Positions 2,269 through 18,433 of a DNA stretch of 39,333 nucleotides are shown one piece after another. The stretch lies in assembly GCA_003693705.1 (NCBI GenBank), contig RBZT01000845.1, positions 1 to 39,333 on the forward strand, written 5' to 3'. The DNA comes from Polymyxa betae A26-41. Taxonomy: Eukaryota; Protista; Endomyxa: Phytomyxea. The position numbers and the translations under genes were made by a program. Under the pieces are notes generated by a model. It was given only the letters and a program-made list of their open reading frames with translations. It ran no database searches and was not told the DNA's origin. Each line of letters begins with the position of its first letter. Within the stretch, counting starts at the first letter, position 1.

Positions 2269-3147
2269 TTATTGCGGTAGGGCAGCTGCTTTTTCCGGCC
2301 CCGGGCGAGCAATGGAGGCGAATCGGGATCCAATCCGGCGAACAGCTCGCCAGAACTGAGCATCACCGAATATGTTGCTGATACCAAGAGCGATGGCAAG
2401 ACCGAGAGATGTATAGCTCATACCATTCGAGCACATTCGATGGAAGAACGTGAGCTGGGCAAAAATTCCCATCAAAATCATCAGGAAATGTCCGATGTGC
2501 TTAACCCTGCGGCTCAACGCCGATCCGATCTCACGGAAGGGAATAAAACATGAAACGAGTCCGAGGATCACCACAGGCAAGGAACCAGCCCTGGACACAG
2601 GTCTGAATACATAGAGAAACGTTACCATGAGTTATGTTACCAGGGGTAGACAGATGCGAGGCAGTCTTCGCTGGACCAACCAGACAGGATATAATGCAGC
2701 ACTCCAATCAGACCAAATAATGTCCCGTCACGGATGTTGTCGAGTGAGTCGTACCCGTCTGGTAACATTATCAGATTCCATCAAGTAACGTATAGGGTTT
2801 ATGCTTACCTTGTAATGAAATTGTGGCAGTTTCAGCGGGTTGGATGGATTGTGTGACAGTTTCCGGAGCGGTTTCGGCTGTGTTTTGGAGGCCCATTTCG
2901 ATATCTGTGAGTCACGTTACTTTGTGGACTATGGTAACGAAACTGTAAGTTGCCCAAATGATTCTGGACTGAGGGAGTCAAGTCCGAGACAGCGGCTGAA
3001 GCGTTGCCAGACCCATCGGTAGGATCGGCTTTGACATCTATAACGAAGTTAGGTCGTGAGATGAAACATTAACAGTACAGGATGGTTACCAAGGAAGGTG
3101 ACAGTAACGGCCAGTGCCAGAATCAGCAGAGATTGAAACGTGTTCAT
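2269..3147 (-). CDS. Signal peptide + 4-TM family member A, 5 exons, 225 aa
   Basis: Exons 3147-3090, 3037-2954, 2904-2809, 2758-2641, 2590-2269 splice to 678 nt open to TAA. Introns 52, 49 (GC-AG), 50, 50 nt. Protein: MNTFQSLLILALAVTVTFLDVKA...DIEMG...EDCLASVYPW-AGSLPVVILGLVSCFIPF... Confidence 0.8.
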
Positions 3148-3282
3148 GGTAACAGACAGATTGCGATATGGACAGACTCGGGGGGGTGGGGTCATCCGGC
3201 AATCGCACTGGCGGGCTGCTCTGAGTCGGGAAAATCCGACTCTGACGGTATATCCGATCTGAATCCGAGGCCCCATCCTGTT

Positions 3283-3460
3283 GTAGATTAATCACAAATC
3301 CGAGTTGACTCATTTAGGCTTGTCCTCCTGCTTTGTCGAAGATTAATCTCAAATTCGATTTGATTTATATAGGCGTGGCCCTAGATTAATCACAAATGCG
3401 TTTTGATTGATAGGGGCGAGGCGCTCTGCTTGTCCAAGTTCAATCTCAAATCCGATGTGA
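3283..3460. promoter_or_regulatory. ~100-bp local duplication with GATTAATC(A/T)CAAAT motifs upstream of gene A
   Basis: GATTAATC at 3286, 3341 and 3384, plus a degenerate fourth near 3440. Gene B has a single unit with two motifs (5800, 5855). Confidence 0.4.
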
Positions 3461-15308: not shown

Positions 15309-17613
15309 TTTCTGTTCTGTGTCTATTTGCGTTTACAAATGAGACAGATCCGGATAAAAACGATCGTTCAGAAGGAGCTCGCGATCATGCTCCTTTTGTT
15401 GGGAGTCCCTAATTCGAACAGTAGTGATAATAAAATCATGGCATTTGAATGGTCACTGGCTGAGGGATACTGCAGAGCTACGAGTTTAATTGGATTACAG
15501 AGATGAGCTAGATTAACGTAGTTATCATTTAGCTAAGCGGGCAACCCTAACCGCATTGCTTTTTTTTAGTTCGTAGGAAATGGATGATATTAATATAGCA
15601 GACCCAGAGAGAATGGAAAGCAGCAGAGACCATTATTCTCAGAAAATAAGTGATGAGGCCGCAAAAACTTTGAGGACAATGACAGAACAGGACAATTCGG
15701 AAGATGGCGTGAAGATTCCCTCTGACAAACAGTGACAGCTCAGAAAAAGATCAAATAGACCTAAACAAGATGGACTTTTTTATTGCACAGAAGAATTCAA
15801 TTGAAAAGAGCATCGATACTTAAAACGTAAATGTAAATCAAGAAACACAAAAGTATCTCGCCCATTGGGAATTGATGCAGCTCTGGAAATGAACGAAGAG
15901 GTCGACAATCAAATGAACAGGCAATTAAATGCAGTCAAGCTTTGCGGACTGATGTGTCTATAAAAGCGAGAACGTCAAGTTCCATCTGCATCAACCTTGA
16001 AATTAGGCACATATCAGGGTCATACGCGACGATATCAGGATGCCGATCGACGGCGATGATATCGATCACCTTTCGGATCGCTTCACCATGTTTGTTGACT
16101 TGCTATCAGAATTGGTGTATAGAGGTGGGAACCATTCGAAACGCCGCTGTTCGCGAGAGCAAGTATACTTTGTTTGCAAAATTTATAAACTTTCACTTTT
16201 CTGTTAACGTATTCGCTTCGCCGTCGAGAACTCTATCAATGACAAGAAGCCGGAAAATAGATGGATCTGCTGATTCGTCGGACTTGGCACCTTGTATACG
16301 TTAGCAATACCGTACTAGAGGGCTGTTATTTCTGTTTCGTAGCTTGAAGTAGCTTCTGGGATCTTAATACTTTCGCTGAGCTCAACTTCGGAATAGTTTC
16401 TGCGTCCAAAATAGGGATGACAGTGCTAGATAATCGGAATCGTAAAGTCGGTCTGTCTGGATTCTCCATCGCGCTATTTAGGCAGCTTCTGTGATATTTC
16501 TATCGGTCTCATTATCTACGCTGAGGCTACCTTCAGTCCAGATGGTAATACCCTCGTCGCTTTTTGGGTAAGAGGGCTCTTTTTTTGTGTTTTGGCGACT
16601 GTTTCTGCTCTCGTACTGAGATGGAAGAATCATTTGCTCAGATATTCTAACAATATGAACTTCTGACAGCTGTGCTTTCGATCTGTGCAGATCGCGATCT
16701 GGTGCTCTCCCATGATATCCTATCAAGGAAATCAATTCTGCTATTTGCTTTGCTCTCAACACAATGCGAACACTATGAATGAATGACATAACTTTTAAAG
16801 CGGATTTTATGCAGAATTAATTAAGTGGAGTGTGCTAACTGTGCTTGGGCTTTTTGGCTAGTTCAGATCCAAATATTCGGCAAAGGACATTGTCATGAAA
16901 ATGCTTCTTGGAGTTCGGACCTTATCGGATGGCGAATTTTCGTTTGAACATTAGAAAAGATTGATCGGTGTTGAATTCGACTTTTGTTCTGTCGACACCA
17001 TGACTCCATGTCCAGCAGTTGTGCTGTCAAACTTTTCGTTCGTTCGTTTTTTGTAAGCAAAGAGACCCAGCCAATGGTGTCGTCACGTGGTTATTCGAAT
17101 TTGTTTTTTGGGAGCAGCATCTCGTATACAAATAGGAATATCACGTTACGATAGTCGCTTTAGGGATTTTGCGGCTGTTGGTTTCGATTTTGAGTCTGCA
17201 TATAATACGGGAATGGTCATTGTCGAACTTACGCAGCATTTTCCACATTCTCCCAAAGTTTAAGGAATAGAAAAATGGTCTCAACTGGGATGCCTTCTTA
17301 AAATGTGGTTTTTAAACCTGTCGAAAACGCATTGAGATGATAATAGCATCATCATTTATTGTCAAAGAGAAACCAATCGGAAAATACATAGCTTCTATAA
17401 TTCATTTTGTAGCCCTTTGAATATCTTGATAGATTTAAACTGAATGTGATTCTAATGCAGAGCTGACACACAATATGCAATTAAAAAGCAGAAAAATGCA
17501 TCAAAAAACATATGAGATGGTCGCCCCAATCAATTTTCAGAAAAAAAGTAACATCAGTCGAAGGAGCTGCAACTGATTGAATCATGTTTGAAGGAAAGTA
17601 ATGATGGGGACCT

Positions 17614-18433
17614 TTATTGAGGAGAACGTGATTTCTCAATATAGGTGCGGAGTTTGCCAATAGCCGTGAATCCGACGAATGCGCCTGCAAATGTCGATAT
17701 GAAGGCTTTGAATTGATCACGAACGCCACCAAATCCGAATCCGAACATCATGGCAGTCAGCGAAATTAAATACATCATATGAGCGACATTGAAGATCTTC
17801 TGAGAGAGAGCAGACTCGGACGTATTGACGGGAGGTATGCAAACAGGAAGTGAAAGAGCGGTGCAAACAGGAAGTGAAAGAGCGGTAAAAACCATCATGA
17901 GGTTCCTAATCAGGAATAAAAGGTTTCGAAAGATCGTCAAATTGCGGTAAGAATTTCTACCAGAGTTGGTCGTCAAAGCAGCCTTGAACGCTGTTGCGTA
18001 AAATGAAGAGGACGCGAAGACCAAAGAACATGCGACCATGAGAAGTGATGCGATGTTGTTAGGCAAGGCTGGCAAAACATCAGAGGCAGAATTCAGCATC
18101 GTGTTACGTTACAGACCTCGGGTCAACACGATTCGGCCAAATCGGATCCCTACTGGATGGTTTGCGAGATAAGGTTCCGGAAAAGACTCGATCGGAGCGC
18201 CCAATCCAATATCCGTTACTGTATGATGGAAAGTGAAAGAAAGTTGAATCAATACGGACCTGTATTGGAGCCGATCAGAGGAGAGCCCTCGGATTCATTG
18301 ACAGCACTGGTTTTACCAGCCAGGGCGTCTGAGACATGGAGGTCAGCGTTTGTAAGCGTGGACATGAAGGTTACAGACCAGAGGCGATCAGGGCCAGAGC
18401 AAGAGCGAATACGACGATGAATCGGATAGACAT
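17614..18433 (-). CDS. Signal peptide + 4-TM family member E (226 aa if intron 4 is retained)
   Basis: Exons 18433-18379, 18328-18260, 18218-18117, 18068-17614 give 681 nt open to TAA. N-terminus MSIRFIVVFALALALIASDALA. A 24-nt in-frame duplication at 17838-17885 gives TALSLPVC twice. A cryptic ancestral intron lies at 17960-17906. Confidence 0.7.

What the first reader, a model, noticed from the sequence alone, without database searches (positions are those of the whole stretch)
2269..18433. Hidden array of five 5-exon genes encoding an unrecognised signal-peptide + 4-TM protein family
Seen: five minus-strand loci share one exon plan. Exon 1 is 55-58 nt and encodes the hydrophobic leader. 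Exons 2-3 encode a variable polar linker (DIEMG in A, B and D, DIGLG in E). Exon 4 encodes TM1 and a loop ending Cys-x(5-8)-Trp, with the Trp codon split TG/G by intron 4. Exon 5 encodes three TM helices with a C-x(1-2)-P motif ending TM2. Intron phases 1,1,1,2 are kept although the subfamilies A/B, C and D/E barely align as protein. The ORF track shows only fragments of these genes. Inference: a lineage-specific, rapidly diversifying birth-and-death family, such as host-interface membrane effectors, variant surface proteins or recognition proteins. I do not recognise a matching named family.
Basis: partly seen in the sequence, partly recalled or inferred. Interest (0 to 1): 0.85.

Follow-up and report, generated by a model that had tools for sequence, protein, structure and literature searches.

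The report
Orphan membrane-protein gene family in Polymyxa
A sugar-beet root parasite (Polymyxa betae) carries an expressed, fast-changing family of small membrane proteins with no relatives found elsewhere; five copies lie in this array, of which three are intact, and their function is still unknown.

Summary
The exon plan is real. The genome matches the Polymyxa betae draft: 1,001 contigs, 27.09 Mb. RNA contigs from four runs splice exactly at my predicted junctions in B, C and D. Contigs carrying A's own letters show A spliced at introns 2, 3 and 4. Exon 1 is 55-58 nt, intron phases are 1,1,1,2, and the Trp codon is split TG|G.

Only A, B and C (225, 229 and 208 aa) have an open spliced frame. 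D is transcribed but has a stop at codon 4 and a frame break at the exon 4/5 junction. E has a frame shift inside exon 4, which retention of its 55-nt intron 4 would offset; I could not test this.

Profile searches of the genome find at least six more loci on four other contigs, all with the same signal exon and split Trp.

No relative was found in 1.84 billion representative proteins, a 5.8-billion-protein set, JGI metagenome contigs, Pfam or PDB. The only hit is gene C itself, mislabelled as a Beta vulgaris protein.

The membrane core is under purifying selection (dN/dS 0.40). The N-terminal linker evolves fast (dN/dS 2.5, p 0.0135), and exons are less conserved than introns.

Function and topology are unresolved. 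Other first-reader notes cover this same stretch; none covers other DNA.

The parts
2269..3147 (-). Gene A, intact, 225 aa. Exons 3147-3090, 3037-2954, 2904-2809, 2758-2641, 2590-2269. Intron 2 has a GC donor.
   Evidence: Spliced frame is open with phases 1,1,1,2. RNA contigs carrying A's letters at 27 of 27 diagnostic sites are spliced at introns 2, 3 and 4.
4759..5654 (-). Gene B, intact, 229 aa. Exons 5654-5597, 5544-5461, 5411-5316, 5258-5141, 5092-4759.
   Evidence: Model. All four introns are confirmed by RNA contigs, three by joints and intron 2 by loose ends. Exon 5 is 82-83% identical to A as protein.
7971..8916 (-). Gene C, intact, 208 aa. Exons 8916-8859, 8807-8727, 8677-8579, 8532-8418, 8244-7971. 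Intron 4 is 173 nt.
   Evidence: Model. All four joints lie on single RNA contigs of 607-718 nt. Database protein P0001 equals its spliced exons 3-5. A second-isolate contig differs by 2 synonymous SNPs and one 1-nt gap near the contig's end.
9858..10639 (-). Locus D, a transcribed and spliced pseudogene. Exons 10639-10585, 10533-10465, 10415-10320, 10268-10163, 10109-9858. Stop codon at 10630-10628; frame break at the exon 4/5 junction.
   Evidence: Reading frames. RNA joints at 10109/10163, 10268/10320 and 10415/10465, plus a loose end for intron 1.
17614..18433 (-). Locus E, frame-disrupted. Predicted exons 18433-18379, 18328-18260, 18218-18117, 18068-17961, 17905-17614. Exon 4 is 2 nt longer than in D and F. 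The 55-nt intron 4 (17906-17960) has no in-frame stop, so ORF 17614-18099 is continuous. A 24-nt tandem duplication lies in exon 5 (about 17839-17886).
   Evidence: No RNA was laid on this locus.
3285..3394 (-). Three copies of the 12-nt motif TGWGATTAATCT upstream of gene A's ATG.
   Evidence: Five matches in the whole window, against 0.63 expected by chance; all lie upstream of A or B.
5799..5865 (-). Two copies of the same 12-nt motif upstream of gene B's ATG, inside the transcribed leader.
   Evidence: RNA contigs run unbroken from 5597 to 6108-6131.

Best explanation
This is part of a Polymyxa-restricted multigene family with at least 11 loci, five of them in this array. It encodes small secretory-pathway membrane proteins of about 180-250 aa.

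Exon 1 supplies a signal-type hydrophobic leader that takes the nascent chain to the ER. Exons 2-3 encode an acidic, low-complexity N-terminal segment rich in Ser, Thr, Ala and Pro, which changes quickly between copies. Exons 4-5 encode a conserved core of four hydrophobic helices. The core has an invariant Trp at the H1-H2 turn, a Pro at the end of H2, an amphipathic S-x-L-S-(Q/R) stretch before H3, and usually one Cys in each of loops H1-H2 and H3-H4. This core anchors the protein and is under purifying selection.

The most likely site of action is the parasite's own surface or another membrane that faces the host cell or the soil, with the variable segment as the exposed part. The family evolves by tandem duplication, divergence and decay.

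Shown: gene structures, transcription and splicing of A-D, family membership, absence of detectable relatives, constraint on the core, faster change in the linker, and defects in D and E.

Inferred: ER targeting, membrane insertion, surface location, and any host-facing role.
For: - Splice junctions are confirmed by RNA.
- A, B, C, F and G have open spliced frames, and H-K admit open models.
- Hydropathy shows a leader plus three or four further segments, with an acidic linker of 5-15 D/E against 2-5 K/R.
- AlphaFold2 places helices where the hydrophobic segments lie.
- The family signature is present in 11 loci on 5 contigs.
- Core constraint: G-H exon 5 dN/dS is 0.40, and the D/E/F exon 5 value is about 0.75. 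Gene C differs from a second isolate by synonymous SNPs only.
- Linker: D-E dN/dS is 2.5 (p 0.0135), G-H is 1.77 (not significant), and F-D exon 2 has 0 synonymous against 8 non-synonymous changes.
- Exons are less conserved than introns.
- No relatives and no named family were found.
Against: - There is no localisation, stage or functional data.
- Run identities are coded, so the life stage sampled is unknown.
- Topology is contradictory. A signal-type leader puts the linker outside, yet K+R cluster in loop H2-H3 and the C tail (gene A: 10 against 2-3). By the positive-inside rule that puts the linker inside.
- Some of the 'TM' segments are only weakly hydrophobic: H1 of A, H4 of F and H3 of G.
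- dN/dS above 1 rests on one pair of defective copies and small counts. A-B overall is 0.76.
- Full-length joined proteins were never searched or folded, so a remote relation to a known 4-TM fold is not excluded.
Confidence: 0.6

Rival explanations
1. A very diverged branch of a known four-helix membrane superfamily (tetraspanin, claudin/PMP22/Sur7, MARVEL, CD20/MS4A, or a channel-type four-helix membrane domain) with an internal housekeeping or channel role rather than a host-facing one.
For: It has about four hydrophobic helices, conserved loop Cys and Trp, and a core under purifying selection. The top Foldseek PDB rows for the exon-5 model are nearly all GABA-A or glycine receptor membrane domains, and the first Atlas shape row is a CD20-family cluster.
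Confidence: 0.15
2. Exported membrane effectors: after secretion the proteins insert into host membranes, as the 2-TM exported families of malaria parasites do, rather than staying on the parasite.
For: The genes have a signal exon, a variable region and hydrophobic helices. They form a lineage-specific, tandemly amplified family on a contig that also holds other signal-peptide genes of unknown function.
Against: I looked for no export motif and found none in passing. Four hydrophobic helices favour retention in the membrane of origin. There is no data on host localisation.
Confidence: 0.1
3. Mostly decaying or functionless young genes whose transcription is incidental.
For: D is transcribed although broken, and E is frame-disrupted. 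A-B dN/dS is 0.76 and D/E/F exon 5 is about 0.75. Notes on the same contig report gene decay.
Against: There are at least eight loci with open spliced frames. Intron positions and motifs are shared across copies that share under 20% protein identity. G-H exon 5 dN/dS is 0.40. Only synonymous SNPs separate gene C from a second isolate.
Confidence: 0.1

Closest known systems
Plasmodium two-TM variant families (RIFIN, STEVOR, Pfmc-2TM); comparison from established knowledge, not tested here
   Same: Parasite-specific, amplified in clusters, first exon encoding the signal sequence, a fast-changing region next to conserved hydrophobic helices, and pseudogenes among the copies.
   Different: No sequence relation. 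Here there are five exons rather than two, about four helices rather than one or two, about 11 copies rather than dozens to hundreds, no known export motif, and no evidence of switching or of surface exposure.
Four-TM superfamilies: tetraspanin, claudin/PMP22/Sur7, MARVEL, CD20/MS4A
   Same: Small proteins with about four membrane helices, short loops and conserved loop cysteines.
   Different: Those families have no cleavable-type leader followed by a long acidic N-terminal segment. There is no CCG-containing large loop and no W-GLW-C-C first loop. No Pfam hit was found. Structural rows are non-specific.
Gene families with conserved introns and signal exons but hypervariable mature-protein exons (conotoxins, snake venom PLA2, Hessian fly salivary SSGP genes); comparison from established knowledge
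   Same: Signal exon and introns are more conserved than the exons encoding the exposed part.
   Different: Those are soluble secreted proteins. Here the variable part is tethered to a conserved membrane core.

Membership tests
Tetraspanin (PF00335) | Four TM helices with a large second outer loop between TM3 and TM4 carrying a CCG motif; no signal peptide | tested here: not met
   Loop H3-H4 is 10-16 aa with one Cys and no CCG. No Pfam hit for exon 5 or P0001.
Claudin / PMP22 / Sur7 (PF00822, PF13903, PF06687) | TM1, then a first outer loop of about 50 aa with a conserved Trp and Cys pair, then three more TM helices (four in all) | tested here: not met
   There are five hydrophobic segments if the leader is counted. 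The linker has no Cys in A, B or F. No Pfam hit.
MARVEL (PF01284) | Profile match over a four-helix M-shaped domain with a cytosolic N terminus | tested here: not met
   No Pfam hit up to E 1 for exons 4 and 5 or for P0001. Full-length joined proteins were not scanned.
CD20 / MS4A (PF04103) | Profile match; four TM helices; both termini cytosolic | tested here: inconclusive
   The first Atlas shape row is a CD20-family cluster (TM 0.69 by query, 0.44 by target), but it sits among unrelated helical rows and the model has pLDDT 69. No Pfam hit.
Pentameric ligand-gated channel membrane domain (PF02932) | Large beta-rich outer domain followed by M1-M4; profile match | tested here: not met
   There is no outer domain, only a 45-75 aa low-complexity linker. 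Foldseek rows have E about 1. No Pfam hit.
The Polymyxa family itself (defined here) | Signal-like exon 1 of 52-58 nt ending in phase 1; exon 4 ending in Trp split TG|G (phase 2), usually as C-x(5-8)-W; last exon with three hydrophobic helices and the S-x-L-S-(Q/R) stretch | tested here: met
   All features are present in 11 loci on contigs C31, C788, C153, C214 and C38. F lacks the Cys. G and H lack intron 3.

The most novel reading that the evidence does not exclude
This is the first hypervariable, host- or environment-facing membrane-protein family of a plasmodiophorid. A conserved four-helix anchor displays an acidic segment under diversifying selection on the surface of the intracellular plasmodium or the zoospore. 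There it could take part in host recognition, in evasion, or in contact with the viruses that Polymyxa carries.
Probability: 0.25. Interest if true: 0.65.

Novelty: new variant of a known kind. Interest (0 to 1): 0.42.

Why it matters
Polymyxa betae is the obligate root parasite that transmits beet necrotic yellow vein virus, and almost nothing is known about its surface or interface proteins. Published plasmodiophorid secretome work discards every protein with a transmembrane helix (PMC12503489), so a family like this is filtered out before analysis.

This family is expressed, restricted to the lineage, and has a constrained membrane core with a fast-changing exposed segment. That makes it a concrete candidate for the parasite-host interface, and one that can be tested by localisation and stage-specific expression.

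The work also gives a practical correction. A GenBank 'Beta vulgaris' protein, KMS65374.1, is a Polymyxa gene.

Tried and rejected
- The search for homologous proteins with E's 161-aa ORF, with P0001 and with the 9-row exon-5 profile returned only P0001 itself.
- The exhaustive profile search of 1.84 billion representatives returned only P0001.
- Two JGI metagenome scans, using D/E/F and A/B exon-5 patterns, found no relative. A first attempt failed for lack of a conserved stretch.
- Pfam gave nothing above cut-off for exons 4 and 5, P0001 or the neighbouring ORFs. PDB sequence search gave nothing. The best Atlas feature score was 0.78.
- AlphaFold2 of P0001:1-133 (pLDDT 57) and of A's exon 5 with 9 rows (pLDDT 69) was too weak for a fold call. 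Foldseek PDB, Atlas shape search and VIA-align wide gave only non-specific helical matches.
- hhalign of A/B against D/E/F exon 5 gave P 0.021. The link between subfamilies therefore rests mainly on gene structure and on the bridging members G-K.
- An alignment meant to fold E's contiguous exon 4-intron-exon 5 ORF misaligned the exon-4 fragments and was dropped.
- The bacterial promoter/terminator scan was irrelevant here.
- Two Polymyxa papers of 2022 are not held in the library.
- Joined spliced proteins were sent to no search or fold tool. Searches went exon by exon by reference. The only joined sequence used was database protein P0001. D and E were handled as separate pieces.
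Full report
ORGANISM AND DATA
The window is a whole contig (C31) of an assembly of 27,085,814 bases in 1,001 contigs. The published Polymyxa betae draft has 1,001 contigs, 27,085,946 bp, 45.1% GC and Illumina coverage of 225x (PMC6328671). Window GC is 41-49%. 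At that coverage, the single-base defects described below are unlikely to be assembly errors.

GENE MODELS
I read the five loci on the minus strand and spliced them in scripts.
- A, B and C give open frames of 225, 229 and 208 aa.
- Their exons are 58/84/96/118/322 nt, 58/84/96/118/334 nt and 58/81/99/115/274 nt.
- Introns are 46-57 nt, except C's intron 4, which is 173 nt.
- Phases are 1,1,1,2 throughout, and the Trp codon is split TG|G at intron 4.

RNA EVIDENCE
The look-up of sequencing runs returned four runs of one study, with identities coded. Their contigs, laid on 4700-10690, behave as RNA because they skip short CT..AC (minus-strand GT..AG) stretches.
- Every joint coincides with my models: three joints plus loose ends for intron 2 in B, all four joints in C, and three joints plus a loose end for intron 1 in D.
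- Single contigs of 607-718 nt carry C's joints.
- A second set of contigs laid on B carries A's letters at 27 of 27 sites that tell A from B. These contigs cross introns 2, 3 and 4.
- A is therefore expressed too, and its GC-donor intron 2 is spliced.
- No listed letter difference falls inside D.

DEFECTS THE FINDING DID NOT MENTION
- D has TGA as codon 4 of exon 1 (10630-10628). After the RNA-confirmed splice of intron 4, exon 5 is out of frame with exon 4. Relative to E and F there is a one-base length difference in the first codons of exon 5. D is a transcribed pseudogene.
- E's exon 4 is 108 nt against 106 nt in D and F. Its start and its C-x5-W end therefore lie in different frames.
- E's 55-nt intron 4 has no in-frame stop, so the genomic ORF 17614-18099 runs straight through into exon 5. 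Retention would restore the frame.
- The donor of that intron resembles D's, which is spliced. My one reads call was already spent, so E is unresolved.

FAMILY SIZE
Exon-5 searches of the assembly found an intact sixth copy, F, on C788. Two rounds of profile search found more:
- G and H, head to head on C153;
- I and J, about 4 kb apart on C214;
- K, plus a fragment, on C38.

Although found by exon 5 alone, every one has a hydrophobic first exon of 52-58 nt ending in phase 1, and an exon ending in Trp split TG|G. Ten of the 11 have C-x(5-8)-W. G and H have lost intron 3. Open spliced models exist for F (180 aa), G (195 aa) and H-K (about 200-250 aa; middle introns not fixed). The 5' modules of D/E/F and of A/B have no further copies.

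RELATIVES ELSEWHERE
- The exon-5 profile, run against 1.84 billion representative proteins, gave one hit, P0001.
- P0001 is KMS65374.1, a 'hypothetical protein, partial [Beta vulgaris]' on a 645-bp contig of a beet assembly.
- The DNA of that contig matches gene C, introns included. It differs by two synonymous SNPs and one 1-nt gap near its end.
- It is therefore Polymyxa DNA inside a beet assembly, and its annotators predicted the same introns 3 and 4 independently.
- Three word-indexed searches and two metagenome scans found nothing else.
- Pfam, PDB sequences and Atlas features gave nothing above noise.

STRUCTURE
- P0001:1-133 gave pLDDT 57. A's exon 5 with a 9-row alignment gave pLDDT 69. 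Helices fall where the hydrophobic segments lie.
- The top Foldseek rows are almost all GABA-A or glycine receptor membrane domains, but at E of about 1.
- Atlas shape rows are a mixed set of helical proteins.
- No fold assignment is possible from these results.

PROTEIN ANATOMY
Hydropathy shows a leader, then an acidic linker of 45-75 aa rich in Ser, Thr, Ala and Pro, then four hydrophobic segments, some of them weak.

K+R cluster in loop H2-H3 and in the C tail. By the positive-inside rule this puts the linker in the cytosol, which contradicts a signal-type leader. One Cys in loop H1-H2 and one in loop H3-H4 lie on the same side of the membrane. I leave the topology open. A separate first-reader note (s1-658130) makes the same point.

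EVOLUTION
- A and B are 88-100% identical by exon. Exons 1-2 and intron 1 are identical. Overall dN/dS is 0.76.
- In D/E/F, the introns and exon 1 are 0.91-0.98 identical between F and D, but exons 3 and 4 are only 0.60-0.81 identical. Pooled F-D introns against exons 3+4 give Fisher p 2e-7.
- G-H shows the same direction: introns 0.88 against exons 0.80, p 0.03.
- dN/dS for D-E over exons 2, 3 and the first part of 4 is 2.5 (one-sided p 0.0135). For D/E/F exon 5 it is about 0.75.
- For the intact pair G-H it is 1.77 in the linker (not significant), 0.70 in H1 plus its loop, and 0.40 in exon 5.
- The membrane core is therefore constrained and the linker is not.
- Introns are also less diverged than synonymous sites, which I cannot explain.

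READING
The best reading is an expressed, lineage-restricted family of secretory-pathway membrane proteins with a fast-changing exposed segment, evolving by tandem duplication and decay. Where the proteins sit and what they do is inference only. Published plasmodiophorid secretome screens remove TM proteins, which may be why the family has not been described.

OTHER NOTES FROM THE SCAN
Other first-reader notes on this same window agree with what I found independently on topology and on E's intron. I found no note of this family on other DNA.

Noticed in passing
L018:1-645 (AYZY01087090); window 8020-8683: GenBank protein KMS65374.1, labelled Beta vulgaris, is Polymyxa betae gene C. Its 645-bp contig matches the window with 2 synonymous SNPs and one 1-nt gap near its end, so it is contaminant DNA in a sugar beet assembly.
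   Followed up: yes
window 3285-3394 and 5799-5865: The 12-nt motif TGWGATTAATCT occurs 3 times upstream of A and twice upstream of B, and nowhere else in the window (0.63 expected by chance). It lies inside the transcribed leader of B.
   Followed up: partly
window 5597-6131; ORFs 3049-3276 and 5556-5708 (minus strand): RNA contigs run at least 450 nt upstream of B's ATG. In-frame upstream ATGs extend the A and B reading frames by 18-43 codons without a stop, so the true start codon is not settled.
   Followed up: no
window 9332-9395: A 64-nt piece has high RNA depth and 255-nt loose ends on both sides. It is 91% identical to G000:C1001:34934-34997. It is probably a stray fragment of a highly expressed gene elsewhere that cross-maps here.
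   Followed up: partly
window 6711-6764 and 7407-7518: Low-depth spliced transcripts lie between B and C. One has a 52-nt minus-strand intron and one a 110-nt plus-strand GT..AG intron.
   Followed up: no
window 17839-17886: Exon 5 of E has an in-frame 24-nt tandem duplication that doubles eight residues in helix H2.
   Followed up: no
D, E, F, G and H loci (window; L008, L015, L017): Introns are 3-4 times less diverged than synonymous sites of the neighbouring exons. F-D intron divergence is 0.06 against pS 0.17-0.30. G-H intron divergence is 0.12 against dS 0.30-0.45.
   Followed up: partly
window 25396-26826, 27978-28394, 36259-37071: Neighbouring ORFs match ankyrin repeats (just below cut-off), DUF1168 (E 1e-21) and DUF2306 (E 2e-12). 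ORFs between D and E (13.8-16.8 kb) have no Pfam match.
   Followed up: partly
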